Below are positions 2,369-61,721 of a DNA stretch of 64,000 nt, in pieces (the first letter of the stretch is position 1; each line of letters opens with the position of its first letter). The position numbers and the translations under genes were made by a program. The stretch lies in contig NW_025766514.1 of NCBI RefSeq assembly GCF_003918875.1, positions 868,001 through 932,000 on the forward strand. The letters are read 5' to 3'. The notes under the pieces were generated by a model. It saw only the letters and a list, made by a program, of their open reading frames with translations, did no database searches and was not told the origin of the DNA. Origin of the DNA: Haliotis rubra. Taxonomy: Eukaryota.

Positions 2369-2609
2369 TCAGATGCGTGTACAGTGATTGGAGGCAGTCA
2401 ATGGCTCCGTCTCCGGGGGATCATAGTCATACTTGGGGTTATAACCCAGGTCATCCATGGGGTAGCTGTGTTCCATGTAGGTCTGCATGTACGGGGGTGC
2501 AGTTGGCTCGGGGGGAGGGGGGTGGGTACGCCATTAGGGTCTCCTCATGCTCTGTATCTTCGTGTTCACGTACCCGCTCTGTGACGCCACAGCAGCACTT
2601 GGTGAAGAA
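2369..2609 (-). CDS. SLC6-like exon 14, cytoplasmic tail: FFTKCCCGVTERVREHEDTEHEETLMAYPPPPPEPTAPPYMQTYMEHSYPMDDLGYNPKYDYDPPETEPLTASNHCTRI*
   Basis: attttcag acceptor at 2610. The stated translation needs one base removed from the G6-A-G6 run at 2510-2522; stop TGA at 2371-2369. Confidence 0.8.
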
Positions 2610-2906
2610 CTGAAAATACATTGCGGAATGTCAAAACTTAGACCAGGAAACCTTAAACCCTGCGAGTGAGTCTGTGTTTTACCGATGACTTACAACTGCA
2701 GAAGGGGTGGTGGGGTACCATTATGTATTCAAAAATGTGTTCATATAATTACATCATTAACAAAAAATTACATTGACCATTTAAAAGTAATTTCATTTTT
2801 GTAGCAAGTAAGTCTCTCATGTTTGACTGTGTGTGGCCACTGGCTGTGTGTGTATGACCACTGGCTGTCCGTGTGTATGACCACTGGCTGTGTGTGTATG
2901 ACCACT

Positions 2907-2943
<37 letters not shown>

Positions 2944-5900
2944 CCACTGGCTGTGGCTGTTCGTGTGTATGACCACTGGCTGTGTGTGTATGACCACTGG
3001 TTGTGTGTGTGTGACCACTGGCTGTCCGTGTGTATGACCACTGGCTGTGTGTGTATGACATACCCCAGGTCCATGTGTGGTGAAGAGTGTGTGTAGCGCT
3101 CCCAGCAGGATGCCGATGTAAGGGAGGACAGCGATGCACCAGCTCACAATCTTCCACGGCTTGGGGAACGTGTAGTTAACCTCCTCATACATCAGATCAC
3201 GGTCATACGTCTTCAGGAACAGCGTGAACCACATGCCCTGTTGGGAGTACACAAACATATAAACCATACACCCTGTGAGGAGTACACAAACATATAAACC
3301 ATACACCCTGTGAGGAGTACACGAATATATAAACCATACACCCTGTGAGGAGTACACGAATATATAAACCATACACCCTGTGAGGAGTACACAAACATAT
3401 AAACCATACACCCTGTGAGGAGTACACATGAACATATAAACCATACACCCTGTGAGGAGTACACGAACATATAAACCATACACCCTGTGAGGAGTACACG
3501 AACATATAAACCATACACCCTGTGAGGAGTACATGAACATATTAACCATACATCCTGTGAGGAGTACACGAACATATAAACCATACACCCTGTGAGGAGT
3601 ACATGAACATATAAACCATACACCCTGTGAGGAGTACATGAACACCCATGCATCCTGTGAGGAGTACACGAACATATAAACCATACACCCTGTGAGGAGT
3701 ACATGAACATATTAACCATACATCCTGTGAGGAGTACATGAACATATAAACCATACATCCTGTGAGGAGTACACAAATTACGGATACGACTGTATGCTAC
3801 AGCTATAGGTGTGGACATGTACTCACTGCAGTAAAGAGTGCTGAGACAAATAACCACAGACCCATGATGATTCTCTCAGCCAGGGCAAAGTTCTGTTTCA
3901 CTGAAACACAAGATGAGTCTGCAGAATGCTTCACTGACTGGTGTCAGTTTTACACTGCTTCTAAAAACATCCAGAAATATCCCGGTCCCCAAATGGTATG
4001 ACAGAAAGACTTGTCTTGAATACATGAATAGGTTTTGTTTGGTACTGGTTACCAGCATTAGACATACAGTGCACCCTGGCTATAATGCCACCTTGGATAT
4101 AATGCCATTTGCCAGAATGGATTTCCTGTCTAAATAATACCCTGGTTATAATGACAAACTGGATGTAATGCCATTTGCCAATGGTTTTTGGAACGAAAGT
4201 CATTTTCAGGTTAACACATGTGACAATACACTTCCAGCCCCCTACAAGAAGTCACCTGCAGCCCCGAGACGCTGGGATTTTCCAGTCATTCAAGGCTCAT
4301 TACCGCAGACATAACCTCAGTCACCTTGTTGATTGCGTAGGGCCTCTAACTGCCTTGATTGTTAGCGTTATGAGCATACCTAGTGTGGAGTTTGGTGCTA
4401 TATAAATGGACATATTATTATTATTATTACCTGGTTATAATGCCACTCTGGATATAATGCCATATTTTCTCCTAGACAAACGGTGGCATTATAACCAGGG
4501 TATACTGTACGTGGAGTCTTGTTCAAGAACACATGCTCTCAATGTCAGATTCACATAGATTATCTCGTGTTAAAGTTAAACATCAGCACTGTCAATGATA
4601 CGTGCTAGAGTGATATACTCACCATACACAACCAGCAGGCCGAACGCCAGCAGTATAACCAGTATAAACTGAACTTTAGAGATGGACTGGTCGATGAGGA
4701 TGAAGTAGTACATGCCTGCCTGAAGAAGAAGAACACCAAGTCAGTCATGTATTACACACCTGTATCTACCGTGGTTGTCTATAGAATCCCCAATATATAT
4801 AAACGACACACATGTATCTACCTTTAGCAACACATGTATCTACCTTGGTTGTCTGTAGAATCCCCATTCCTTTAACGACACATTTATCTACCTCGGTTGG
4901 CTATAGAATCCCCATTCCTTTAGAGACACACCTCTATCTACATTTAGCGACACACCTGTATCTACCTTTAGCGATACATGTATCTACCTTGGTTGTCTGT
5001 AGAATCCCCATTCCTTTAGCAACACACCTGTATCTACCGTTAGCGACACACATGTATCTACCTTTAGCGACACACCTGTATCTACCTTTAGCGACACACA
5101 TGTATCTACCTTTAGCAACACACCTGTATCTACCTTTAGTGACACATGTATCTACCTTGGTTGTCTGTAGAATCCCCATTCCTTTAGCAACACACCTGTA
5201 TCTACAGTTAGCGACACACATGTATCTACCTTTAGCGACAGACCTGTATCTACCTTTAGTGACACATGTATCTACCTTGGTTGTCTGTAGAATCCCCATT
5301 CCTTTAACGACACATTTATCTACCTTGGTTGTCTGTAGAATCCCCATTCCTTTAGCAACACACATGTATCTACCTTTAGCGACACACCTGTATCTACCTT
5401 TAGCAACACATGTATCTATCTTGGTTGTCTGTACAATCCCCCATGCCTTTAACAACACACCTGTATCTACCTTTAGTGACACACCTGTATCTACCTTTAG
5501 CGACACACCTGTATCTACCGTTAGCGACACATGTATCTACCTTGGTTGTCTGTAGAACCCACATTCCTTTAACAATACACCTGTATCTACCGTTAGAGAC
5601 AGATGTATTTACCTCTAACAACACACCTGGATCTAACTTCAGCGACACACCTGTATCTACCGTTAGCGACACATGTATCTACCTTGGTTGTCTGTAGAAT
5701 CCCCATGCCTTTAGCGATACACATGACGACGAAGGTCATGAGCAGGTGGATGACGATCTTGCTGCAGCACTTCTTGTCTATCCACTCCTCCAAACTGTCC
5801 ATGATGTTGTCCACGATAGTCAATGAGCCCACCACCTGGGCACAGATATGTAACAACATCTCCGAACACTGCACACTGGAAATGGCTTCAAGTTTCCCGA

Positions 5901-8900
5901 ATATCAAAATGGTATTTTGTGTACCTAGAATTTGCTTTGACATTAGAGATTAACTCACTAACACATCTAATAACTTTCAAAATCAATGCAGGCCTGAATG
6001 TGATGGTGAAACGCTTGGCCACTTTAACAGTTACACAAGAAATGGGCTTCACACGTTGTACCCATGGGAGAATCGAACCCAGGACTTCGTTGTGATGAGC
6101 AAACGCTTTACCCACTAGGCTACCCCACCTCCCCTGTCACCCCTGTAACAAACAACAGGAAATAAACACGTATATGTATCTGATCACTACAGCACAGCTT
6201 AAGGTATATGTATCCGATCACTACAGCACAGCTTAACGTATATGTATCCGATCACTACAGCACAGCTTAACTCAAGACATCGGGTTAGTTACTGTTTTCC
6301 ATTAAATGTCCTTCATATTAAGCATCCATTTGTAATTGTGTCAGATTGTCCTGAAATTATTTATAGCTTGGTCACATTTCGCCAACTCACCAAGAACATG
6401 AGACCGAAGAGGAATGCAGACAGGAGGAAGAGGAAAGCGTAGATGGGTGGAATGTTGAGCACGGTGAACGCTGCCGGCATCTGCCACAGCACCAACCCTG
6501 GACCCACTTGATCTGAAACACACAAACACACACTAGGATAAACACAGCTCAGAAATTATGGAATTCAGAACCAACTGTGCCAGAACTCAGAACCATCTTA
6601 GTCTGTATAATGGAACTCACAACTTACTCTGCATGCTGAACTTGGTATGCTGGAACTTAACACTTACTCCGCATGCCAGGACTCAGAACTTACTCCGCAT
6701 GCCAGGACTCAGAACTTACTCCGCATGCCAGGACTCAGAACTTACTCTGCATGCCAGGACTCAGAACTTACTCCGCATGCCAGGACTCAGAACTTACTCT
6801 GCATGCCAGGACTCAGAACTTACTCCACATGCCAGGACTCAGAACTTACTCTGCATGCCAGGACTCAGAACTTACTGCTGTTTGCCAGACTCAGAACTTA
6901 CTCTGCATGCCAGGACTCTGCTGTTTGAAGATCATGTCACCTAGGTACGGCGCCATAGCGATTGGAGGGAGCTGGCTGCAGAGTGCGTAGACACCAATCA
7001 TAAGAACCCAAGTGCTGCAAAGGAAGAAAGAGGTGTTGTACACTTGAGCATCATCAGAGTTGACAGGCTACGATGCTGTGTTGTCTCCTCCTTGAACTGA
7101 TGGCACTATATAATGGTACTTACATGACGGTACTACATGACGGTACTGGTATATGAGGGTACTATATGATGGTACTGCTATATGAGGGTACTATATGATG
7201 GTACTCACATGTTTCGTATTGACCTCCCCTTGCCACACATCTTGCCCATGGTTGCAGCGATGATGGTCCACACCGGCAGCGAGTTCATTACCACCAGCAG
7301 GGACTGATGCCAGCTCTGTAGGGGAACACATACATCATAGCTCATATGTTTACGGAGAATTAATTACATCCAACAGAACCTGGTGTGTATAAATACATGA
7401 GGGAATGTATTCTTGGATGTTGGCATGGAGTATATGTACATGTAAAGCACTGTACTCTGGGATGTAGGCATTTTGTATACGTACACATAAAGAACTGTAT
7501 TCTGGGATGTAGGCATGGTGTATACGTACACATAAAGAACTGTATTCTGGGATGTAGGCATGGTGTATATGTACATGTAAAGCACTGTATTCTGGGATGT
7601 AGGCATGGTGTATACGTACATGTAAAGAACTGTATTCTGGGATGTAGGCATGGTGTATATGTACATGTAAAGCACTGTACTCTGGGATGTAGGCATGGTG
7701 TATACGTACACGTAAAGCACTGTATTCTGGGATGTAGGCATGGTGTATATGTACATGTAAAGCACTGTATTCTGGGATGTAGGCATGGTGTACATGTACA
7801 TGTAAAGCACTGTATTATGGGATGTAGGCATGGTGTATATGTACATGTAAAGCACTGTATTCTGGGATGTAGGCATGGTGTATATGTACATGTAAAGCAC
7901 TGTATTCTGGGATGTAGGCATGGTGTATAACGCATACATGTAAGCACTGTATTCTGGGATGTAGGCATGGTGTATATGTACATGTAAAGCACTGTATTAT
8001 GGGATGTAGGCATGGTGTATACGTACATGTAAAGCACTGTATTATGGGATGTAGGCATGGTGTATATGTACATGTAAAGCACTGTATTCTGGGATGTAGG
8101 CATGGTGTATACGTACATGTAAAGCACTGTATTCTGGGATGTAGGCATGGTGTATATGTACACGTAAAGCACTGTATTCTGGGATGTTGGCATGGTGTAT
8201 ACGTACACGTAAGGAACTGTATTCTGGGATGTTGGCATGGTGTATATGTACATGTAAAGCACTGTATTCTGGGATGTAGGCATGGTGTATACGTACACGT
8301 AAAGCACTGTATTCGGAGTTGTAGGAGTACACTTGCTTGAGGTAGGCGAGGGCAGCGGAGCGGTCAAGGTGGGTGTAACCGTAGCCCAGCACAGCCAACA
8401 GACAGGACAGAGCAGCTGGACCCATCACAAACAACACCTGCAAACGAAGGCAGAAACGTGATGCGTCTTGACAAGGTACACTGCACTACATTGACAGAAA
8501 CTTTGGCAGCCATTGGGTCCTCCTCCATAATTGTTGCTATGGTATTTTAACTGAAGTAATTTCTTTAACCCTTTCATAACTTTTATGGTTAAAACAAGAA
8601 CTCGATCTTGATGTACATACTTAACATTGTACGTTCAGGTTTTTCCAATTTCCAAAGGTCAAAGACCTCTGTTTGTTTTTTACATATTTAACAAATAAAA
8701 GCAAAACAATATGCTGAATTTACTCAAGATTCTGTTGATATACATCAGATAATATCCAATAGAAATGATTTAAATATTATTCAATTCCTTCTTTGTGAGG
8801 CCCAGTTAAATCTGATATCAGCACTGTAGAGAGGGAAAATGTAAGCTCCCATGAAGGTGAAAGGCACTAAAGTGAGTATCTACCCATCCACAGAAGCGTC

Positions 8901-11900
8901 CCCCCGAAGCCAACGAGGAGGAAGATGATGACCCACACAATGGCTAACGTCACCGGCATCAGTGAGACCTCCGCCTTCCGCGCAATCTCCGTGAACTTCC
9001 ATTGAGGAAACCCATCCATGGAATCCACACCAGTGGAGAGCTGCAGAAACTCGTGTCTGTAAGTAAATACAATACTCTCATCATAGGGGCAAGCAAATAC
9101 TGTACTCTCATACTTTCAACTGCTTAATAATAACACAATCTGTGCAATTAAAGCACTAACATTACTACCCTGGTCACTGGGTCAGTGTATACCTCCACCC
9201 CAGCTGCCTGTGAGGCACGAGAAGGTTAATGGTTACATGACCATCCCATCCCACCGGGTACTAGTGTTGGGAATTGGTTTCAATCTCATAATGTTGATTG
9301 CTTCATTACAACTGATCAATCATCGAAAATAATTGCATTATTTATGAAATTTTCCAGGTTCTTTTTTTTTGTTAATGCAAAAAAACATAATGAAAAAAAC
9401 ATGTAGTTCTTTGGGTTTTTTGTGTGGCAAATTTCACATCTTGAAAGGATGACTAGTATGTTAGGAACAAAAGTCTTCCTGGAGTCTTTAAGATAAATTC
9501 AATCATGCCTTGGAACAAGCTTGTAGTCGTTATGAAATGTAACTTACAAAACCAAACTTGTGAAAAATATTGTTAATGCAAAAAGTGTTCCAGAATTGTT
9601 TGTGTTCGATTATGAGAAAACATGATCGATTGCTTGGTCGTTTAGTCACTGTGACCTATCTTCGATTTTTTCAATTAATCGGACCACCACTACCGGGTAC
9701 CCATTCACTGCATGGTAAACAGAGACAATTTTGAACAAAGTCACTGGCCTAGAGTACAACCACATGTGTTACATGTACTTTGTTGTGGGGAAGGACTGAA
9801 GTCCAAGACACTCTCAGGAATCAAGCTGCCAAACACGGTCACCCATCAAAGGATTCCCTGCAACCAACTCTGCTTCACTTCCACTGATTTACGATACATG
9901 TGCTCTTTGCACAAATCCAAACAACACCACTGTCTCTGAGTGACTGATGAATAAGATATGTGTTAGCTCTCTAAGAGTGAGTGAGAGAGTGAGTATGGTT
10001 TAACGCTGCTTTTAGCAATATTCCAGCAATATCGCAGTGGAGGGCACCAGAAATGGGCCAGCTCTCTAAGAGTGAGTGAGTGAGTTATTATTTAACGTCA
10101 CATCGGCAATATTGCAGCCATATCGTGACGAGAACATATTTGATTTTGAAGTGGAATATATGTATAATATAAACCTGTCAACGAAGGACAGTAAAACAAC
10201 TAGAATATCACAATTAGCTCTCTAAGAAGTATTTGAACAAAGCACCAACTGTCAAGATGAAGTCAATGTAGCATGCGGGTGACAGCTGACCAATTTAACC
10301 CCCTTTGGTAATGTAAAACATCTCTGACTTACCTGTAAAACAGCTCCTCAGCTCTTCGGTAGGATTTCATGTTGTTCAAAATTCTACAACAGAAAAGTGC
10401 ATTCTTGACAGTGTCAGACAATAGAGGAGGTTCAAGCCCTATCTACCACACCAAAATGACAAAAATATAAAGGATAAAAATCTTTCAAGAAACTCATTCG
10501 ACCTGTTCATTCAACTTTAAAACTTTCCATTCCATGACAACACTGACTGACCGAGTATGGTTTTTAGCGGCTTTTAGCAATATTCCAGCAATATCACGGC
10601 GGGGACACCAGAAATGGGCTTCACACATTGTACCCATGTGGGGAAAGGAACCCGGGTCTTCGGCATGATGAGCGAACACTTTAACCATTAGGCTACCCCA
10701 CCGCCCCTACTAGTGACAGTGACTCAGTTCAGTGCTACATGGTGTCCCAGAGTTGGACTGACATTCATTCAGTAAGCCTTGGATCTGCATAGGTAAACGT
10801 CTAACTGATTTTTTCAACAAGCTTCAAATGACCGTTGCCAACAGACAATTTGTTGTAGTTGTATTTGTGTCTGTTACCATGGTTACTTACTTCACTTCTG
10901 AAAAGCCATCATAGCAGAAGGGCTGGTCCACTATAGCCTTACAGTTGCCCCACACATATGGCTGCTCGGAGATGGCGATGAAGGCGTAGGTGCCGAACTG
11001 GGCCACGATGGGGGCAAGGTTGGTGAGTCTCAGCAGCAAGTCTATCACAGCCACAACACCAACACCTGTAACAATAATTATAATAATAATAATGATAGCT
11101 TATTTGTATTACGCTTTTTCCATACTTGGATATTATGCTCAAAGCGCAGTGAGGATTGATCCTGTAACACGGATATAGAGGGACTAGACATGGCAGACAT
11201 GATAGCCACTTACAAGTGTAAAAGTGCGCACAGCTCGCATACCCCCGCTTCCCACTGTGGGACTTGGAGGTGAGGTGAAATAGGGTTTAACGTCGTACTT
11301 GAGAATGTTTCGCTCATATGACTTAAGCTGGTTTAATAGTGCTAGCCCACAGAGATACCATGCCACAGTGAAGCATGAATACCCCACTCAGACACATTAT
11401 ACTGACTCCAAGCCGACCAGTCCTTGTTGTACCCATGTTGAACTGATTCATGCCGAGCGCCAGGCAGGAGCCAACAAGCACCATATTTGAACGTCTTTTG
11501 GTATGACACGGACGGGGATCGACCCCGTGACCTTCTCCGGGCGGATGCTCTAACCACTACACCACCGAGGTGGTCTTGGGACATGGACATGACTGATATT
11601 GATATATACAATTGGTACATATGACATGAAGAAAGACAATGAAAAGTGAAAAGTTAACATCACACTTTGAATAATCACATTTTGCAAAAAGAAATCGCAC
11701 AAGGCACATCTGTTGGTCATGATTAACTTGTGTGTTAAGTTTGGTGAACCTAACATGTATAGTTTCAGTGCTCCGGACAAGACAACCATCAAACACATTT
11801 TGCACTATGTCGTGTTTCTATGGAAACAGAAAAAAAAAAATTCTGATAAACTTCAACTTAGCAAAAGCCACATCTGTGAGTGTTGACTAACATATGTATG

Positions 11901-13484
11901 GAGTTTGGTGAATCCAGTAAGTAAACTTTAAGAGATATGCACCAGACAAAGTTTCGAGACAGAAGGAAGGACGGAAAGAACGTTATATACCCCCATTACT
12001 TTGTAAGCGGGGTATAATAATAAAATCTGTAGAAAACTTTAAGAATATAGCTACTTATGATTTAACAAGTACCTTCCCTGATAAGCTTTCATCTGTATTG
12101 ACACACTAGCGTCCACGTGGATAGACTTACCCTTCCAGATAGGGAAGAACATAGAGAATATACCCACGATGCCCTTCTGTAGGTAGCCACCCAGCTTGAG
12201 CTGGATATACAGGGCCGGGGTGCAGATGAAGAATGTCAGGAGGTACAGCGCGATCACCGACATCCCCCCTGAAACATCAGTACATAGTGTAGAGTGAGTG
12301 AGTGGGTTTCAGTTACAAATAGTTCCCAAATATAAGTACCTTGGAATGTTCATGACAAGTAAGCTAACATGGATTTCAACTCATTCACAACTTTCACAGC
12401 AAGAGAGAAAAGTAACTTTCGGATTGATAAGGTTCATCATAACTTGACATTACCAGATCATTACTGTTATTTGACAGGATCACTGTACCAATACTAGAAC
12501 ATATGGATCAGAGATTTAAGGGTTTCAAGTATGAAGAACACATCGAGAAGATTCATCATCAGTTTTGCAAACAGATGTTGGGAGTTGGAAGAAAACGAGT
12601 AACACAGCTGTTCTAGGTGAACATGGATGATGTCACACTTGCTTGATAACGGTGTTAGCATCTACACCGAAATGTCGGTGACTATCCATAGTACTTGGTT
12701 TTCCTTCATCTTTACAACTTCTAAAATGCCTCTCAAAGAAGTATTGTATATAAAAAAACGTATCAAGCTTTGGTTGAAAGTACTGCATATGCCAGACGAC
12801 AGACACTCGAAACAGAGCGAGTTCTACTGCTGCTTTGAACGGTATTCCAATTATAACGCAGTATGTCAGCCTTACTGTCTAGGAAAGCCTGGGGTGATAC
12901 AGGCTTCAAATGTTCACCACTCAGGTTCAGCCCACAAGGAAAGGTATGGCGTAGACAAACATGAGTAGAACAAACTGGGATTTGGATCCACAAAATTTGA
13001 TTTTGACATGCATGAGAGAGACGAACTCACCTCAGATATTTGTTGCACCTCAGACCTCTATTATGACGTCATGAATGTCTACAGTTAAGATGCGCAGATT
13101 GATGCTCATGCTGTTGATCAGTGGATTGTCTGATCCATACTCGATTATTTACAAACCACCGCCATATAGCTGGAATATTGCTGTGTGGCATAAAACTAAA
13201 CTCACTCACTCACTCCCTACAGTTAAGAATTCTAAGGATTGTGACACGGTAAGCATGACATTAGCGTATACAAGTAACTTGAAAAATACGTAGTGAAACT
13301 TTACAGGACACTCTCTACATAAATGTTCACCAAATTTTCTCCCTGAAATATGTCGACACGCTTGCTGCAAATGTACGACCTGATCACGTGACTTACCCTC
13401 CGGCGGCCTCATGAAGGACAGGTAGCAGGTGAACAGCGATATGAAGATGAACTGCATGGGGTTCCAAGGGGCTATCTCTCCCAT
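2369..13484 (-). CDS. Atypical SLC6/NSS (SNF-family) 12-TM transporter-like gene, 14 coding exons, ~614 aa: 13484-13397, 12268-12131, 11065-10891, 10383-10333, 9056-8884, 8437-8297, 7315-7209, 7014-6902, 6512-6391, 5835-5683, 4719-4623, 3900-3827, 3237-3064, 2609-2369
   Basis: Hand-spliced, all GT-AG, phases chain 1,1,2,2,0,0,2,1,0,0,1,0,0. SLC6 landmarks are in the right order: LKLGGY...FPIWKGVG (TM2-TM3), PYVWGNC...FC (EL2 cysteines), AEELFYR..LQLSTG, GPGLVLWQMP (EL4), AGMYY (TM10), YTFPKPWKIVSW (TM12). Needs removal of one base at 8900-8905 and one at 2510-2522. Confidence 0.9.
2826..3060. repeat. Minisatellite (GACCACTGGCTGTGTGTGTAT, 21-25 bp) with embedded (TG)n, starting at the exon 13 donor
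   Basis: direct inspection. Confidence 0.9.
3064..3237 (-). CDS. SLC6-like exon 13: GMWFTLFLKTYDRDLMYEEVNYTFPKPWKIVSWCIAVLPYIGILLGALHTLFTTHGPG (TM11-TM12)
   Basis: cccaacag acceptor, gtatgt donor, 174 nt phase 0-0; Y..YxFPxW..GW-like motif. Confidence 0.9.
3238..3775. repeat. 35-bp minisatellite (~15 copies) duplicating the exon 13 splice acceptor
   Basis: minus-strand unit ...gtactcctcacag|GGTGTATGG versus real ...gtactcccaacag|GGCATGTGG. Confidence 0.92.
3827..3900 (-). CDS. SLC6-like exon 12: KQNFALAERIIMGLWLFVSALFTA (first half of TM11)
   Basis: tgtttcag acceptor, gtgagt donor, 74 nt phase 1-0. Confidence 0.85.
4067..4507 (+). mobile_element. Non-autonomous pogo/Tigger (Tc1-mariner superfamily) element with a DDE_1 remnant; contains a short LINE-type 3' end with (ATT)n tail at ~4352-4429
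   Basis: TA|CAGTGCACCCTGG...CCAGGGTATACTG|TA; remnant VTIHFQPPTRSHLQPRDAGIFQSFKAHYRR resembles Tigger FLPPNTTSxLQPxDxGII..FKxxYR; second copy at 48276. Confidence 0.88.
4623..4719 (-). CDS. SLC6-like exon 11: AGMYYFILIDQSISKVQFILVILLAFGLLVVY-V (TM10)
   Basis: ttcttcttcag acceptor, G|gtgagt donor, 97 nt phase 0-1; matches GGMYxFxLxD...xYG. Confidence 0.92.
4755..5722. repeat. Compound minisatellite (24-bp and ~50-bp units) duplicating the 3' end and donor of exon 10
   Basis: repeated minus-strand GCTAAAGGAATGGGGATTCTACAGACAACCAAG|gtagatac, nearly identical to the exon end (AKGMGILQTTK). Confidence 0.92.
5683..5835 (-). CDS. SLC6-like exon 10: VVGSLTIVDNIMDSLEEWIDKKCCSKIVIHLLMTFVVMCIAKGMGILQTTK (end of TM8, TM9)
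   Basis: gcccag acceptor, AAG|gtagat donor, 153 nt phase 0-0. Confidence 0.88.
6038..6134 (-). mobile_element. tRNA-derived SINE family A, partial
   Basis: A box TAGCCTAGTGG and B box GGTTCGATTC on the minus strand; ~13 copies in window. Confidence 0.85.
6391..6512 (-). CDS. SLC6-like exon 9: QVGPGLVLWQMPAAFTVLNIPPIYAFLFLLSAFLFGLMFL (EL4, TM8)
   Basis: tgtttcag acceptor, gtgagt donor, 122 nt phase 1-0; GPGL motif. Confidence 0.92.
6620..6918. repeat. 26-bp minisatellite (~11 copies) duplicating the exon 8 donor
   Basis: minus-strand unit GAGTCCTGGCATGCRGA|gtaagttct. Confidence 0.92.
6902..7014 (-). CDS. SLC6-like exon 8: TWVLMIGVYALCSQLPPIAMAPYLGDMIFKQQSPGMQ-N (TM7)
   Basis: ttcctttgcag acceptor, A|gtaagt donor, 113 nt phase 2-1. 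Confidence 0.88.
7209..7315 (-). CDS. SLC6-like exon 7: SWHQSLLVVMNSLPVWTIIAATMGKMCGKGRSIRN-I (TM6)
   Basis: cccctacag acceptor, gtgagt donor, 107 nt phase 0-2; positional equivalent of VWxDAATQIFFSLG...YNxxxNNCYR. Confidence 0.88.
7385..8315. repeat. 45-bp minisatellite (~20 copies) duplicating the exon 6 3' end and donor
   Basis: minus-strand unit AATACAGTGCTTTACRT|gtacrtatacaccatgcctacatcccag. Confidence 0.93.
8297..8437 (-). CDS. SLC6-like exon 6: VLFVMGPAALSCLLAVLGYGYTHLDRSAALAYLKQVYSYNSEYSALR (TM5, EL3)
   Basis: tttgcag acceptor, CGT|gtacgt donor, 141 nt phase 0-0; the donor lies in the first unit of the 45-bp array. Confidence 0.82.
8884..9056 (-). CDS. SLC6-like exon 5: HEFLQLSTGVDSMDGFPQWKFTEIARKAEVSLMPVTLAIVWVIIFLLVGFG(GRFCGW) (TM4)
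   Basis: ttacag acceptor, gtagat donor; 173 nt as given, 172 needed, so one extra base in the C6 run at 8900-8905. Confidence 0.85.
9140..9935 (-). mobile_element. 5S-rRNA-derived (SINE3-type) retroposon with CORE-like centre, interrupted by a hAT MITE
   Basis: minus strand 9894-9836 TCGTAAATCAGTGGAAGTGAAGCA-(25 nt)-TGGGTGACCG matches 5S box A/box C spacing; body homologous to 13805-14080. Confidence 0.65.
9262..9692. mobile_element. hAT-type MITE, 8-bp TSD CCGGGTAC
   Basis: TAGTGTTGG...CCACCACTA termini; TSD at 9254-9261 and 9693-9700. Confidence 0.85.
10333..10383 (-). CDS. SLC6-like exon 4 (51 nt): K-ILNNMKSYRRAEELFY-R (EL2)
   Basis: ttgtag acceptor, AG|gtaagt donor, phase 2-2; AEELFYR resembles SLC6 PxEEFWxR. 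Confidence 0.85.
10545..10707 (-). mobile_element. tRNA-derived SINE family A, full length
   Basis: GGGGCGGTGGGGTAGCC head, GCTGGAATATTGCTAAAAGC tail. Confidence 0.9.
10891..11065 (-). CDS. SLC6-like exon 3: VGVVAVIDLLLRLTNLAPIVAQFGTYAFIAISEQPYVWGNCKAIVDQPFCYDGFSEV (TM3, start of EL2)
   Basis: ttacag acceptor, gtaagt donor, 175 nt phase 1-2; W-x-x-C...C of EL2. Confidence 0.9.
11069..11160 (-). mobile_element. 5'-truncated LINE/SINE 3' end (L2/CR1-like stem-loop plus (ATT)n tail) abutting the exon 3 acceptor
   Basis: GCGCTTTGAGCAT...AAAAGCGTAATACAAAT...(ATT)n. Confidence 0.6.
11265..11576 (-). mobile_element. tRNA-derived SINE with a Meta/MESC (RUDI-like) central domain
   Basis: GGTGTAGTGGTTAGAGC A box, GGGTCGATCCCC B box, then GTCATACCAAAAGAC..AAATATGGTGCTTG..CCTGCCTGGCGCTCGGCAT..CAGTATAATGTGTCTGAGTGG. 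Confidence 0.75.
11620..12018 (+). mobile_element. Helentron-associated non-autonomous element (HINE/DINE-1-like)
   Basis: two internal subrepeats containing AGTTTGGTGAA, GACAGAAGGAAGGACGG microsatellite, 3' hairpin ATACCCCC..GCGGGGTAT. Confidence 0.7.
12131..12268 (-). CDS. SLC6-like exon 2: GMSVIALYLLTFFICTPALYIQLKLGGYLQKGIVGIFSMFFPIWK-G (TM2)
   Basis: tgtttcag acceptor, G|gtaagt donor, 138 nt phase 1-1; matches SLC6 GGGAFLIPY...ELALGQ...PLFKG. Confidence 0.92.
12305..12830 (+). pseudogene. Decayed non-LTR retrotransposon reverse-transcriptase C-terminal fragment
   Basis: LQIVPKYKYLGMFMTSKLTW ... YGSEI ... IEKIHHQFCKQMLGV ... TAVLGEHG with frameshifts. Confidence 0.7.
13085..13215 (+). 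mobile_element. SINE family B, 3' fragment
   Basis: GATGCTCATGCTGTTGATCA..CCGCCATATAGCTGGAATATTGCT..AACTCACTCACTC. Confidence 0.85.
13397..13484 (-). CDS. SLC6-like exon 1 (coding part): MGEIAPWNPMQFIFISLFTCYLSFMRPPE-G; degenerate TM1
   Basis: ATG at 13484, in-frame TGA upstream at 13508-13506, donor G|gtaagt; likely acceptor tttcttccag at 13601 makes 13600-13485 5'UTR. Confidence 0.78.
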
Positions 13485-23833: not shown

Positions 23834-24385
23834 CCAATTCGTTGGTTTCACATTAATTTTCGACTCGCTGTGCGCATGCGCAGAGCGTGTAAAAATATCC
23901 ACGGGCCAACTTCCGGTTTGGTCGTAAGCTTTACCGATAGTGTAAACACATTCTAAAGAAAGCAAAAATCAAAACAAATATATGGTTTTATGTCGAATTT
24001 AACTGATCTCAATTCATTTATGAATGGAAGGGACCGGAATTAGTTAAATAAATAGCTTAACGTTTGTTAACAAGCTCTTGTATAAACACATCTCACCACC
24101 ACCCGTCCACCGTCCTTCCTGCACATCCCCTTCTCACAAGTAAAAACACATCTCTGATGCAATGCCACCAAAATAGGACATCAATTATTGAAAAGCATAG
24201 GCAAATGGATGGATGTACTCAACTATGAACAGTTGTCACGCGTAAATAATATTCATACAGCATTTATTTAGAGTGTGTTTACAATATCGCTAATACGACC
24301 AAACCGGAAGATGACCAGTGGATATTTTTACACGCTCTACGCATGCGCACAGCGAGTTGAAAATTAATGTGAAACCAACGAATGG
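23834..24385. mobile_element. MITE with ~130-bp TIRs
   Basis: ATTCGTTGGTTTCACATTAATTTTC..TTCCGGTTTGGTCGTA pairs with 24260-24383; no clear TSD. Confidence 0.85.
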
Positions 24386-32788: not shown

Positions 32789-33325
32789 AAGGGATTTATC
32801 CTGCTGCCATATAGCTGGAATACTGCCGCATAAAACTATATAGCTGGTATACTGCTGAGTCCGGCATAAAACTAAACTCACTCACTCAAGGGATTTATCC
32901 TGCTGCCATATAGCTGGAATACTGCTGAGTCCGGCATAAAACTAAACTCACTCACTCAAGGGATTTATCCTGCTGCCATATAGCTGGTATACTGCTGAGT
33001 CCGGCATAAAACTAAACTCACTCACTCAAGGGATTTATCCTGCTGCCATATAGCTGGAATACTGCTGCTGAGTCCGCATAAAACTAAACTCACTCTCACT
33101 CAATAGGGATTTATCCTGCTGCCATATATACTGCTGGAATACTGCTGAGTCCTGAGCATAAAAACTAAACTCACTCACTTTATCAATAGGGATTTATCCT
33201 GCATAAAACTGCCATATAGCTGGGTAATACTGCTGGGAGTCCTGCTGCCATATAGCTGGAATACTAGTCCGCAAAAACTAAACTCACTCACTCACTCCTG
33301 CTGCCATATAGCTGGAAGGGATTTA
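32789..33325 (+). repeat. ~70-bp tandem array formed from the 3' end of SINE B plus flank
   Basis: unit AAGGGATTTATCCTGCTGCCATATAGCTGGAATACTGCTGAGTCCGGCATAAAACTAAACTCACTCACTC. Confidence 0.9.
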
Positions 33326-34516: not shown

Positions 34517-35072
34517 CATTCTCTTCCCACAGAGGTTACTCGTCATATCTTCCTATGAACCTCTGTTCTAATACGGCCATATTTCCCAGTTCTCGTAAAA
34601 TCCCCTAGCGGCAAAAGATCGCAACACGAATTATCTCCCTTCTGTCTATCCAATCAGAACACGTGTAACATCGATTTAGATCCAACCTGACTAATACAAG
34701 CAAATATGGGGCCACAAATATCCCTCCTCTGCCGGGGAACTTGTGTTGACGTGACACACAAGGCATTTAATGGCAAGCTTATCCGTTGTCAACGAGGGCG
34801 AGGGAGACGCCATTGAAGCGCTATTACATGACTGAGTTCTGTCTAGAAGGAACGTTTGCGCATCGCGCAGGGGAAGAGGTTCTAGTTTTCCCGAAGCATA
34901 CGGAAATTACCGAGACCTTGCGAATGATCACTTTTGAAACAACGTCGCTGATTGCACAACTAAATCTGATTGCAACCAATCACGAATCCTGAACACTCGC
35001 ACCACGAAAGGGCCGTATTAGAACAGAGGTTCGTAGGAAGATATGACAAGTAACCTCTGTGGGAAGAGAATG
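34517..35072. mobile_element. MITE with ~62-bp TIRs and 9-bp TSD ATTTACAGA (Mutator-type TSD length)
   Basis: CATTCTCTTCCCACAGAGGTTAC...GTAACCTCTGTGGGAAGAGAATG; TSD at 34508-34516 and 35073-35081. Confidence 0.92.
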
Positions 35073-37650: not shown

Positions 37651-38920
37651 TAACAAGAAGACAAAGTCATCAATATCCCCCGCAATGGCAAAATACTCTT
37701 CATGATTATGTCTACGAGTTATGTTTATGTCAAATATTAAGGTGTGTATATAGAAAAGTGGAAGGAGAGTATTGAAAGGTGTTTAAAGTTCTGCTCTAGA
37801 AAGGAGCACTATCACCAATTTCAGTCTATGTCAAACTTGTTGCCATGGAAATGCCAAAAATATTTTATTCAGAATTCCAAAACTACCAAAAGGCACCAGT
37901 ACACCACCAGATCTATGTATGTGCCAAGTTTGGTGAAGAAATAGTGAACGGTTTTAGAGTTCAGCTCCGGAAAAGTGTACTACCACCAATTTCAGGCTAA
38001 GTCAAACTTGTTGCCATGAGAAACGCCAAAAATATTTTATTCAGAATTCCAAAACTACCAAAAGGCACCAGTACACCACCAGACAAATCTTTGTGCAAAG
38101 TTTGGTAAAGAAATAGTGAACGGTTTTAGAGTTCTGCTCGGGAAAAAATTTCAGGCTTACTCAGCCATGGAAACGCCAATTTCAGGCAAATTAGTCAAAC
38201 TTGTTGCCATGGAAACGCCAAAAATATTTTATTCAGAAATCCAAAACTACCAAAAGGCACCAGTACACCACCAGATCTATGTATGTGCCAAGTTTGGTAA
38301 AGAAATAGTGAACGGTTTTAGAGTTCTGCTCCGGAAAAGAGCACTAGTACAATTTCAGGCTTAGTCAAACTTGTTGCCATGGAAACGCCAAAAATATTTT
38401 ATTCAGAATTCCAAAACTACCAAAAGGCACCAGTACACCACCAGACAAATCTATGTGCAAAGTTTGGTAAAGAAATAGTGAACGGTTTTAGAGTTCTGCT
38501 CCGGAAAAGAGCACTAGTACAATTTCAGGCTTAGTCAAACTTGTTGCCATGGAAAAGCCAAAAATATTTTATTCAGAAATCCAAAACTACCAAAAGGCAC
38601 CAGTACACCACCAGATCTATCTATGTGCCAAGTCTGGTAAAGAAATAGTGAACGGTTTTAGAGTTCTGCTCCGGAAAAGAGCACTACCACAATTTCAGGC
38701 TAAGTCAAACTTGTTGCCATGGAAATGCCAAAAATATTTAATTCAGAATTCCAAAACTACCAAAAGGCACCAGTACACCACCAGATCTATCTATGTGCCA
38801 AGTTTGATGAAGAAATATTGAACGGTTTTAGAGTTCTGCTCCGGAAAAGACAAATGTGCACGGACGGACGGACAGAGTCCATTTTAATACCCCCCGCAAA
38901 ACGCGTTGCGGGGGATAAAA
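37651..38920 (+). mobile_element. Helentron-associated non-autonomous element with an internal 170-bp tandem array (~6 units)
   Basis: T|AACAAG start, GAGTTCTGCT recurring at 38321/38491/38661, (GGAC)n, 3' hairpin CCCCCGCAA..TTGCGGGGG. Confidence 0.85.
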
Positions 38921-46416: not shown

Positions 46417-46710
46417 GGGGCGGTGGGGTGGCCTTGTTGTTAAAGTGTCTACTTGTCACGATGAAGACCCGGGTAACCAAACCCTCATCTCAGGTATCGC
46501 TAAATTAGGAACCAAACCCCCATCCTCAGGTATCACAACAAGAACCAAACCTCATCACAGGTATCACAACAGGAACCAAACCCTCATCCTCACAGGTATC
46601 ACAGATTCCTCATATGGGTATGATGTGTGAAGCCCATTTCTGGTGTCCCCACCATGATATTGCTGGAATATTGCTTAAAGCGGCGTAAAACCATACACAC
46701 TCACTCACTC
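46417..46710 (+). mobile_element. SINE A interrupted at its B box by ~4 units of the neighbouring 32-bp minisatellite (46474-46603)
   Basis: GAAGACCCGGGT|aaccaaaccctc...ggtatcaca|GATTCCTCATATGGGTA. Confidence 0.8.
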
Positions 46711-48275: not shown

Positions 48276-48913
48276 CAGTACACCCTGGATATAATGTCAC
48301 CCTGGATATAGCACCATCCTGGATATAACATCACCTGGATATAATGCCACCCTGGTTATAATGCCATCCTAGATATAATGCCACCCTGGTCATAATGCCA
48401 CCCTGGTTATAATGCCACCCTAGATTTATTGCCACCCTGGTCATAATGCCACCCTGGATATAATGCCATGTTTTTGCCAGAACAGATTTCCTGTCTAAAT
48501 AATATCCTGGTTATAATGCCAAACGGTATATAGTGCCATTTGCCAATGGTTTTTGGAACAAATGTCATTTTTCCCTGGTTATAATTCCAATTGCTCTCGC
48601 TGCATGTAGTATACATACCTTAATTTGTTAATTGACATGACTCAAATTTATTGTAAACGCAATAATGCTTAAAGTAGTCTTAGACAGGATAACACATGTG
48701 ACAATACACTCCCTGTCACCTACAACAAGTCACCTCCAGACCCAAGATGCTGGGATTATCCAGTCATTCAAGGCTCGAAACCGGAGACATAACCTCAGTC
48801 ACCTTGTTGATTGCATAGGGCCTCTAACTGTCCTACCAGGTTATAATGCCACCCTGGATATAATGCCATATTTTCTCCTGGACAAACAGTGGCATTATAA
48901 CCAGGGTATACTG
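48276..48913 (+). mobile_element. pogo/Tigger non-autonomous element (same family as 4067-4507) with amplified 18-bp subterminal repeat
   Basis: CAGTACACCCTGG...CCAGGGTATACTG|TA; SPTTSHLQTQDAGIIQSFKA remnant. Confidence 0.88.
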
Positions 48914-48924
48914 TATGCGGAATG

Positions 48925-58833: not shown

Positions 58834-61147
58834 TAGAGTTGTGACGATATATCGATACTTGAATAGTCGTGATATTAAAATCAGACGATACAATATATCG
58901 ATACGATCCATGTGTATTGATTCACCGACGATATATACTTGCTAAAAGGTCGCCCACATTTGAATTGTTTTTATTCATACATCATCGCGAATTTCGCGAC
59001 CGATGAAAACAACAGGGGAGCGCCATGTTTCAGGTTGCTAGGCGACGTTGAATCTCGCGAGATTTCGGCACTTCTCGCATGCGCACAAGGAAAATGGTCG
59101 CTGACGACGCTGTGTTTTTGAAGCCTGGTGCAGGATATAAAAGCAAGGTGTGGAAGCACTTTTTACTATCGAGAGATAAAACTCAAGTGGCATGTACCTT
59201 CTGTGATGTGAAAGCAACTTATCGAGGAAACACGACAAACATGTCGACACACTTGAAAAGGCACCACCCCCTGGAATACGATCTTGTTACAAAGACTGAC
59301 ATCGTGACTGACAACAAACGGAAAGTCAGTGCAAGTGGAACTGTACCGCAAATGTTTGAACATTCCTGCATGTATTCCCCTGGAAGTGATCGATCAAATG
59401 GGATAACCAAAGCATTGACATATTACATTTCAAAGGTATGCAACCTTTTTCCATTGAGGAAAATGAGGGTTTTATTAATTTTGTTCTCGTTTTACATCCC
59501 CGATACAAACTGCCAAACAGAAAAACTGTGTCTCAGACTATCATTCCCAAACTGTATGAAGAAACCAAATCTTCAGTTTTGTCTGATTTGAAAACAAGTG
59601 AAAGGGTAGCACTCACCACTGATGGTTGGACCAGCCGTGCCACACAAGCCAACATATCTCCAGTGCTTGGGAGATTGTGTCACATGTTCTCCAGACCAGG
59701 GTCATTGAGGAAAGTCATACTGGAGTGAATATTGGGAAAGTGCTTAAGGATGCTGTGGAAGAGTGGGGCATTGCTGACAAGGACCCAGCTTTGGTTACTG
59801 ATAATGCAGCTAATATGGGTGTTGCTGCTGAAGTTGCAGAACTAAGGCCATACGTCTACTGCTTTGCACATACGCTGAACCTGGCCACTCAACGTGGCTT
59901 ATCTCCAGCTTCAACCAGCAATATATGCCACATTAGTTTCCAAAGATATCCAGAGGAAAGAGAGTGACATCAGCACACTCACTGAAAGTGATGTCAGAAA
60001 TTTGGAACTACTTCTTGAACTTTTGGGACCCCTGAAGAGAGCAACAGAGGTATTGTGTGATGAAAAAGTGCCTACAATTTCCATTGTTGCTCCAATGCTG
60101 TATCTCATCAAAACCCAGATGACCCCCAATGATGATGATTCTCCTCTTGTCAAAGATGTAAAGCATGCAATTGAGGTATAGTTAAACAAGCGATACACCA
60201 AACCAGAAGTGCAGCAGGTCCTTCATCAGTCTTCTGCGATGGATCCTAGGTTCAAGACTCTTCCATTCTTGAAAGAAGACCAGAAAGCAACAGTGTTTGC
60301 TGAACTGGCTACATGTATTGCAGAATATTGTGACAGACGTCACCTGGTATGTCCACATACTATTTCACAAATTAAATCTCAAATATACATGATTTGTGCC
60401 ACACCGTCAAATTTGAAAACTTATCCACTTGATTAAAAGAATATGTTAAATTGTTAATCTCAAATTTCAATTCTAAATTTTATAAAATGTAATTTCAAAT
60501 GTTCAGTTTGAAAAGGTTCTAACCTAAATTCAATTATTAGAAATTCAACCTTTATTCAGTTTTTTGACTTCTTGAATTATCAGTTTTTGTAATCTGTATA
60601 TTTTCAGGAACTGGTTGATGTGAAGGATGAGCCCAAGGATGATACTGCCCTCCCTGACCTACCAGTACCACCGGCAATTGCTGGGATCGAGATGGATACA
60701 CCTGAACTTGATACTCCTGCTGCTGTCTGTGGCATAAAGAAAGAGCCAGATGATAGTGCTGTACAGTCCAGTGCTTCAACCTCTCTCTCGGCTCTGTTTG
60801 GTGTTGTGTATGTTGTTAAGGTGGAACCCGGTCCAGGGGATGGAGACACTGAGGGGGCCAGCAAATCCTCATTGGTTTGTGTACAGGAGGAAATTGATAA
60901 ATACAGGAAAGAGATTCCTCTAAATGTGGATTTAAATCCTTTGGTGTGGTGGAAATGTCACCAGCAGGTCTACCCAATGTTGTCACAATTTTGCAAGTCC
61001 TTGCTCTGTATCCCTGCAACTTCTGTTCCTTCCGAGAGGGTATTTTCAACTGCTGGTGTTATTGTCACTGCACAAAGGGCCAACCTGAGTTGGAAACATG
61101 TTGACAGGATGATTATCCTTAAGAAGAATCTTAAAAGGTACTTCTGA
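58834..61147 (+). mobile_element. hAT (Ac/ZBED1-like) DNA transposon, 5' TIR present, 3' TIR not found in window
   Basis: TAGAGTTGTGACGAT terminus with subterminal CGATA repeats, followed by a transposase. Confidence 0.88.
59094..61147 (+). pseudogene. Disrupted hAT transposase: BED zinc finger, DDE core, hATC dimerisation domain; one intron at 60347-60607
   Basis: SKVWKHF..CTFC..NTTNMSTHLKRHH; LTTDGWTS; VTDNAANM; CFAHTLNL; DPRFK; WW..YP.L..IPATSVPSERVFS. Frameshifts near 59435, 59648 and 59900, stop at 60179-60181, RWNS segment absent; CTG|gtatgt...ttttcag|GAA phase 0. Confidence 0.9.
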
Positions 61148-61721
61148 ATTTCTATTCAAAATCAAAAGTACGTTTTAAATATTCTGAAATTAAGGAATCA
61201 GTGATGTACTGTCATATTCATCTACACTGCAGTGGGAACACTGATCTGCATTGTCGTGAATGACATTCATGTTAAAAGGATTTAATTTAAAAGTTGTTCA
61301 AATGTTCAGAACTTTATAGCTTTGTGCTGATCTGTTACTTCACACTTCCTCATTAGTACCTCACACCTCTGTGATCACAGAGGTATTACTGTTCAATAGA
61401 TGAACACTACTTATACACACTAGACTACTTACAAATACTTGAAGAGGGTATGATAACCTGTCAGTGCTCACTTTAGTCATGTATTTCATTTTGTCATTTA
61501 TGCTTTAAATATTGGAGCATTCCATGTACATGTACTGTGACTGCATACTACATGATACTAGTCTGGTGCTGTTTGTTTATAATATTGTTTTATCTTTTTC
61601 TGTTGTTCTAAAACTCTTTATTGTGTCAATATCAGATATTAACTGACACAAGGATGTCAGGCTGTCAGCAACATTAATGTTACATAATCATCCCTACCGA
61701 CACCTACTCAGTTTTGTTTAT

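What the first reader, a model, noticed from the sequence alone, without database searches (positions are those of the whole stretch)
3238..8315. Four introns of one gene are built from tandem amplifications of their own splice junctions
Seen: four unrelated minisatellites (45, 26, 24/50 and 35 bp) each begin inside a coding exon and copy the exon edge plus the splice site. They are the exon 6 donor (~20x), exon 8 donor (~11x, consensus GTAAGT), exon 10 donor (AAG|gtagat, dozens) and exon 13 acceptor (~15x). They make up most of introns 6, 8, 10 and 12, leaving unique cores of only about 35-110 nt. Smaller repeats also start at the exon 7 and exon 13 donors. Inference: recurrence at splice junctions is hard to explain by random minisatellite birth. 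It suggests a splice-site-anchored amplification process, selection to lengthen minimal introns, or a VNTR-tuned splicing switch. The spliceosome must pick one site among many near-identical decoys.
Basis: partly seen in the sequence, partly recalled or inferred. Interest (0 to 1): 0.85.

Follow-up and report, generated by a model that had tools for sequence, protein, structure and literature searches.

The report
Splice-junction repeats in abalone-type transporter gene
Four or five introns of a transporter gene in a mollusc (probably abalone) are filled with tandem copies of their own exon-intron junction, an already described kind of repeat ('mirage' minisatellite) that splicing usually ignores; the one open point is that here they sit only in the introns that would otherwise be the shortest.

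Summary
In a 14-exon SLC6-like gene on the minus strand, arrays of 45, 26, 24/50 and 35 bp span the exon 6, 8 and 10 donors and the exon 13 acceptor, adding about 18, 10, 27 and 15 decoy sites; a decayed 14-mer at the exon 7 donor is a fifth. These are 'mirage' minisatellites, described in amphioxus (PMC3087553, PMC3902484) and, as one locus, in human F7 (PMC1557585), where only the exon-proximal site is used. This scan has found the same pattern in many other genes of this genome. Four spanning arrays against 0.6-0.7 expected is real locally (P about 0.003, post hoc). But all sit in the five introns that collapse to 50-125 nt, where spanning is expected from geometry (3.0-3.3 expected); none of the 16 junctions of longer introns is spanned. 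That argues against amplification aimed at splice sites as such. Introns 11-13 and the exon 11 acceptor have the same positions in a distant homologue, so at least intron 12 predates its array. Best reading: tolerated, fast-turnover repeats. No RNA, raw reads or abalone orthologue could be obtained, so site usage, copy number and ancestral intron length are untested.

The parts
2451..13484 (-). Host gene: 14-exon SLC6/SNF-like transporter model, E1 13484-13397, E2 12268-12131, E3 11065-10891, E4 10383-10333, E5 9056-8884; last exon uncertain (2609-2451 preferred, 2659 start possible)
   Evidence: GT-AG and phase continuity; exons 2 and 9 hit only SLC6 proteins, weakly and in the right order
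8297..8437 (-). Exon 6; its last 29 nt are the first copy of the 45-mer
7406..8325 (-). 45-bp array spanning exon 6 donor, 20.4 units; decoys at +45 to +225 are in frame and open, later ones lie behind a stop
7209..7315 (-). Exon 7
7098..7211 (-). Decayed 13/14-bp array at exon 7 donor; one intact donor copy at +85
6902..7014 (-). Exon 8; last 17 nt copied in the 26-mer
6610..6918 (-). 26-bp array spanning exon 8 donor (core 6662-6918), 10 GTAAGT decoys, all behind a stop 8 nt into the intron
6391..6512 (-). Exon 9
5683..5835 (-). Exon 10; last about 40 nt copied in the 48/50-mer
4757..5722 (-). Mixed 22/24/48/50-bp array spanning exon 10 donor, 27 GT decoys; intron collapses to 50 nt
4623..4719 (-). 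Exon 11 (97 nt, same length and phase in homologue L001)
3827..3900 (-). Exon 12 (74 nt, same in L001)
3236..3774 (-). 35-bp array spanning exon 13 acceptor, 15 CAG decoys; the real site differs from all decoys; intron collapses to 67 nt
3064..3237 (-). Exon 13
2828..3059 (-). 21/23-bp array abutting, not copying, the exon 13 donor

Best explanation
These are mirage minisatellites. In a genome where minisatellites are born and expand often (27 arrays, 32% of this window), a 25-50 bp duplication in a 50-125 nt intron nearly has to include a junction (shown as arithmetic). The duplicate is silent if the site nearest the exon is still used, first donor or last acceptor (inferred from human F7 and amphioxus; exon definition would give this), so it escapes selection and grows into the intron by slippage or unequal exchange, while the exon copy is held by coding constraint and the intronic copies drift (shown as sequence pattern). 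Rare use of decoys mostly gives a stop or frameshift and is presumably removed by nonsense-mediated decay (inferred). Why short introns host the arrays is not settled: either they favour birth or retention, or array turnover eroded their unique sequence.
For: Unit anatomy and one-sided growth into the intron. Same definition and harmlessness in amphioxus Adh3, globins, TnC, PGBD5; most upstream donor always chosen among identical ones in F7. Conditional on host intron, expected spanning 3.0-3.3 versus 4-5 seen. Intronic copies carry amino-acid-changing differences and spreading stop units. Terminal functional copy differs from the homogenised interior, as described for mirages. Homologue L001 has the same exon 11, 12, 13 boundaries without arrays. 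Twenty other arrays in the window touch no known coding junction.
Against: No RNA seen here, so use of the exon-proximal site is assumed. Uniform birth does not explain why 5 of 7 arrays fall in the 5 shortest introns (P 1e-4 to 3e-4; rank test P 0.001-0.003; both post hoc). Decoys are as good as or better than the real donor by U1 match and no shared RNA fold hides them.
Confidence: 0.62

Rival explanations
1. Arrays are kept because they hold near-minimal introns above a length floor: once an intron's unique part is 37-100 nt, collapse to one copy would splice badly, so selection sets a lower bound on copy number.
For: Arrays sit in exactly the five introns with the shortest remainders; intron 10 collapses to 50 nt, only a donor, a branch-like motif at -22 and a pyrimidine tract; no intron of the gene is now under 194 nt.
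Against: Ten to thirty copies are far more than needed to pass a floor; short remainders can be a result of array turnover (decayed copies lie in the remainders of introns 6 and 8); ancestral lengths unknown; the distant homologue's introns 11 and 12 are 328 and 1177 nt.
Confidence: 0.15
2. A mutational process aimed at exon edges or splice sites (polymerase pausing or R-loops at donors, repair tracts ending where conserved exon meets polymorphic intron, or CATG/GTAC seeds common in donors) creates the first duplication.
For: 6 of 7 arrays in the gene span or abut a junction, 5 at donors; CATG or GTAC is in 13 of 23 units versus 7.3 expected (P 0.008, pattern chosen after looking); scan notes report 3-5-fold enrichment in other genes (not checked).
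Against: None of 16 junctions flanking longer introns is spanned; donor bias 4:1 not significant (P 0.19); arrays are not significantly close to dispersed-repeat edges (P 0.08-0.13).
Confidence: 0.13
3. A copy-number-tuned splicing switch: decoys are used to send message to decay, or, at exon 6, to add 15-residue modules to a loop.
For: Five exon 6 decoys and four exon 13 decoys are in frame and open; in human duplicated genes boundary repeats often show alternative transcripts.
Against: A unit divisible by three arises one time in three and 29 of its 45 nt come from the coding frame, so an open frame is expected; three units carry a stop; the four arrays are unrelated and have no shared logic; known mirages give no aberrant mRNA.
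Confidence: 0.06
4. The arrays are inflated or invented by the assembly.
For: If the genome is the H. rubra Nanopore/Illumina hybrid assembly (species from scan notes only), repeat interiors are hard to polish; exon 5 has a one-base frameshift in a G run; no reads were seen.
Against: Units differ by recurrent substitutions shared among copies and show higher-order patterns and decayed edges; exon copies differ from interior copies; arrays are under 1 kb, well inside a long read. Copy number may be off, existence hardly.
Confidence: 0.04

Closest known systems
Mirage minisatellites of amphioxus (Adh3, globins BflGb6/9, TnC, PGBD5; PMC3087553, PMC3902484; original Canestro et al. 2002 not held)
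   Same: Unit spans an exon-intron boundary, donors or acceptors, several per gene, unit 10-72 bp at Adh3, many copies keep GT/AG, boundary copies escape homogenisation.
   Different: Mollusc rather than cephalochordate; 10-28 copies against 2-7 in the globin and PGBD5 cases; strict link to the shortest introns not reported in the papers read; instability and splicing fidelity untested here.
Human F7 intron 7 37-bp VNTR (PMC1557585)
   Same: First unit spans the exon-intron junction and gives a ladder of identical functional donors.
   Different: Single locus with 5-9 sites and experimental proof that only the most upstream is used; here four to five junctions in one gene, one an acceptor, no experiment.
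Internal tandem repeats at exon-intron boundaries in human segmental duplications; intron gain by tandem duplication (PMC2812944)
   Same: Tandem repeats at boundaries that could alter splicing.
   Different: Those create new introns or alternative transcripts; here intron 12 and the far end of intron 10 are at old positions shared with a distant homologue.

Membership tests
mirage minisatellite | Tandem repeat of minisatellite-size units | tested here: met
   TRF periods 45, 26, 24/48, 35 with 10-32 copies
mirage minisatellite | Unit spans an exon-intron boundary | tested here: met
   Exonic part matches 25/29, 17/17, 35/38, 8/11
mirage minisatellite | Copies duplicate the splice signal (GT or AG) | tested here: met
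   18, 10, 27 GT decoys and 15 AG decoys
mirage minisatellite | Boundary copy excluded from homogenisation | tested here: met
   Real exon 13 acceptor and exon 6 tail differ from all or most interior copies; not so for exon 8
mirage minisatellite | Length polymorphism or instability between alleles | not testable with these tools
mirage minisatellite | Normal splicing, no aberrant mRNA | not testable with these tools
   No RNA available
intron gained by tandem duplication | Intron position absent from homologues | tested here: not met
   Intron 12 and the acceptor of intron 10 are shared with L001; introns 6 and 8 not tested
SLC6/SNF transporter (host gene) | PF00209 match above cut-off | tested here: inconclusive
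   Exon-by-exon only: exon 9 PF00209 E 0.28, PDB SLC6 hits E 0.4-1.3 for exons 2 and 9; joined model not searched

The most novel reading that the evidence does not exclude
In abalone, junction-copy minisatellites are a routine way in which near-minimal introns get and stay longer: they arise or are retained mainly in 50-125 nt introns, and selection on intron length sets a floor on copy number, giving thousands of natural ladders of identical splice sites for testing how the spliceosome picks one.
Probability: 0.2. Interest if true: 0.62.

Novelty: new member of a known kind. Interest (0 to 1): 0.3.

Why it matters
As a single locus it is another example of a described repeat class, apparently not yet reported for molluscs in the papers I could search. 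It would matter more if the short-intron link holds genome-wide: that would tie minisatellite birth to intron length evolution, and the acceptor ladder (last of 16 AG sites used) would be a natural test of exon definition against first-AG scanning. Practically, such arrays can mislead gene prediction and exon-primed PCR.

Tried and rejected
Orthologue hunting exon by exon gave no abalone gene: representatives search found two distant single-exon homologues, three homologue searches were blank, exact look-ups blank; these blanks are limited by the length filter and say nothing on absence. Atlas search uninformative; PDB search blank or spurious for exons 6, 10, 13. Rfam: nothing. RNA folding as a common way to hide decoys rejected: z +2.7, +2.3, -0.6, -2.6. 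Arrays at dispersed-repeat edges: not significant. General palindrome enrichment in units: none (P 0.77). Intron creation by the arrays rejected for intron 12. The 2002 mirage paper is not held; it is cited through PMC3087553 and PMC3902484. No report of mirages in Haliotis found.

Full report
Gene. The region holds a minus-strand gene of 14 exons from 13484 to about 2451, with GT-AG introns and continuous phase. Exons 2 and 9, searched alone, hit only SLC6 transporters, weakly but in the right order; the spliced model was searched exon by exon and the joined step was left out. One break exists: a run of six G near the end of exon 5 puts exon 6 out of frame by one base. That may be an assembly error in a homopolymer or a real broken allele; I could not test it. 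The organism is not given; scan notes call the genome Haliotis rubra (unchecked), whose assembly is a Nanopore/Illumina hybrid with 1.3-1.4% heterozygosity.

Observation. The four arrays are as described. The 45-mer holds the last 29 nt of exon 6 plus 16 intron nt; the 26-mer the last 17 nt of exon 8 plus 9; the 48/50-mer about 35-40 nt of exon 10 plus the donor, with a 22/24-mer deletion derivative that keeps the donor; the 35-mer 24 intron nt plus about 11 nt of exon 13. Matches to the real exon are 25/29, 17/17, 35/38 and 8/11. Decoys number 18, 10, 27 and 15; one, three, five and none are identical to the real site over 18-23 nt. The exon 7 donor repeat is a decayed fifth case with one intact donor copy at +85. 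The exon 13 donor repeat only abuts the donor.

Chance. The window has 27 minisatellite arrays covering 32% of its bases. With each array collapsed to one unit and wholly exonic births excluded, 0.6-0.7 should span one of the 26 junctions; four do (P about 0.003). This is post hoc. The informative split is by intron. After removing repeats, the introns with arrays at junctions have the shortest remainders: 37, 52, 79, 86, 97 nt against 181-1065 nt (rank test P 0.001-0.003). Given those host introns, geometry alone predicts 3.0-3.3 spanning arrays of 7, so four or five is unremarkable (P 0.3-0.4 and 0.08-0.12). Junctions of long introns are never spanned (4/10 or 5/10 against 0/16, P 0.014 or 0.004). 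So in this gene the unexplained fact is not that arrays cover splice sites but that they are in the short introns (P 1e-4 to 3e-4 under uniform birth). That may be cause (short introns favour birth or retention) or effect (turnover erodes unique sequence); I could not separate these without orthologues.

Age of the introns. A distant homologue from another animal assembly (L001) has exons of 97, 74 and 180 nt in the same phases as exons 11, 12 and 13 here (97, 74, 174), aligning above shuffles, with introns of 328 and 1177 nt and no junction arrays. Intron 12 and the 3' end of intron 10 therefore predate the arrays, and the exon 13 acceptor matching the homologue is the last AG of the ladder. 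This is indirect support for use of the exon-proximal site.

What decoy use would do. All exon 8 decoys lie behind a stop 8 nt into the intron; all exon 10 decoys shift the frame or lie behind a stop; five exon 6 decoys and four exon 13 decoys are in frame and open. The exon 6 open frame is expected from construction, its copies carry amino-acid changes relative to the exon, and three units carry a stop, so nothing suggests selection for coding modules. Decoys match U1 as well as or better than the real donors and no common fold hides them, so position must decide. In human F7, identical downstream donors are functional but only the most upstream is used, even when in-frame options exist. For the acceptor ladder, use of the last AG needs a local branch point or exon definition; a branch-like motif lies at -23 of the real site but also in most decoy units. 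This step is inference.

Comparison. Repeats spanning exon-intron boundaries were named mirages in amphioxus Adh3 and found in globin, TnC and PGBD5 genes; units are 10-72 bp at Adh3, both boundaries can be hit, arrays are unstable, splicing is unaffected and the mechanism of origin is stated to be unclear. The sequence-level defining features are met here; instability and splicing fidelity were not testable. I found no paper on mirages in abalone. The scan has noted the same pattern in at least a dozen other genes of this genome, some with RNA said to show only real sites and 3-5-fold enrichment, others with none; these are unchecked notes and not counted as support.

Verdict. Real, known in kind, most likely tolerated (0.62). 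Interest 0.3.

Noticed in passing
window 8884-8910 (minus strand, end of exon 5): A run of six G puts exon 5 one base out of frame with exon 6; the only break in the gene model. Homopolymer assembly error or broken allele.
   Followed up: partly
window 58836-61700: hAT-like DNA transposon with a BED-finger transposase in several frameshifted pieces, wedged between two minisatellite arrays.
   Followed up: partly
window 17419-63999: About 19 further minisatellite arrays (units 17-170 bp, up to 3.7 kb) in 50 kb without recognised coding exons; some are tandem copies of parts of dispersed repeats (32838-33179, 37986-38850) or sit inside one (46475-46603).
   Followed up: partly
window 4072-4515 and 48281-48921: Two copies of a non-autonomous element with 17-bp tandem subterminal repeats; one fills half of intron 11.
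   Followed up: no
window, all arrays: CATG or GTAC occurs in 13 of 23 repeat units against 7.3 expected; possible seed motif, chosen after looking.
   Followed up: partly
window 2451-13484: The SLC6-like protein is very divergent: no close full-length relative turned up in the exon 13 searches.
   Followed up: partly
L001 2110-2587: The distant homologue ends in a coding 24-bp repeat and a 34-bp array that starts across its apparent stop codon.
   Followed up: no
window 23837-23961 and 24263-24383; 34517-34578 and 35011-35072; 1722-1779 and 2207-2263: Pairs of inverted terminal repeats marking small non-autonomous transposons.
   Followed up: no
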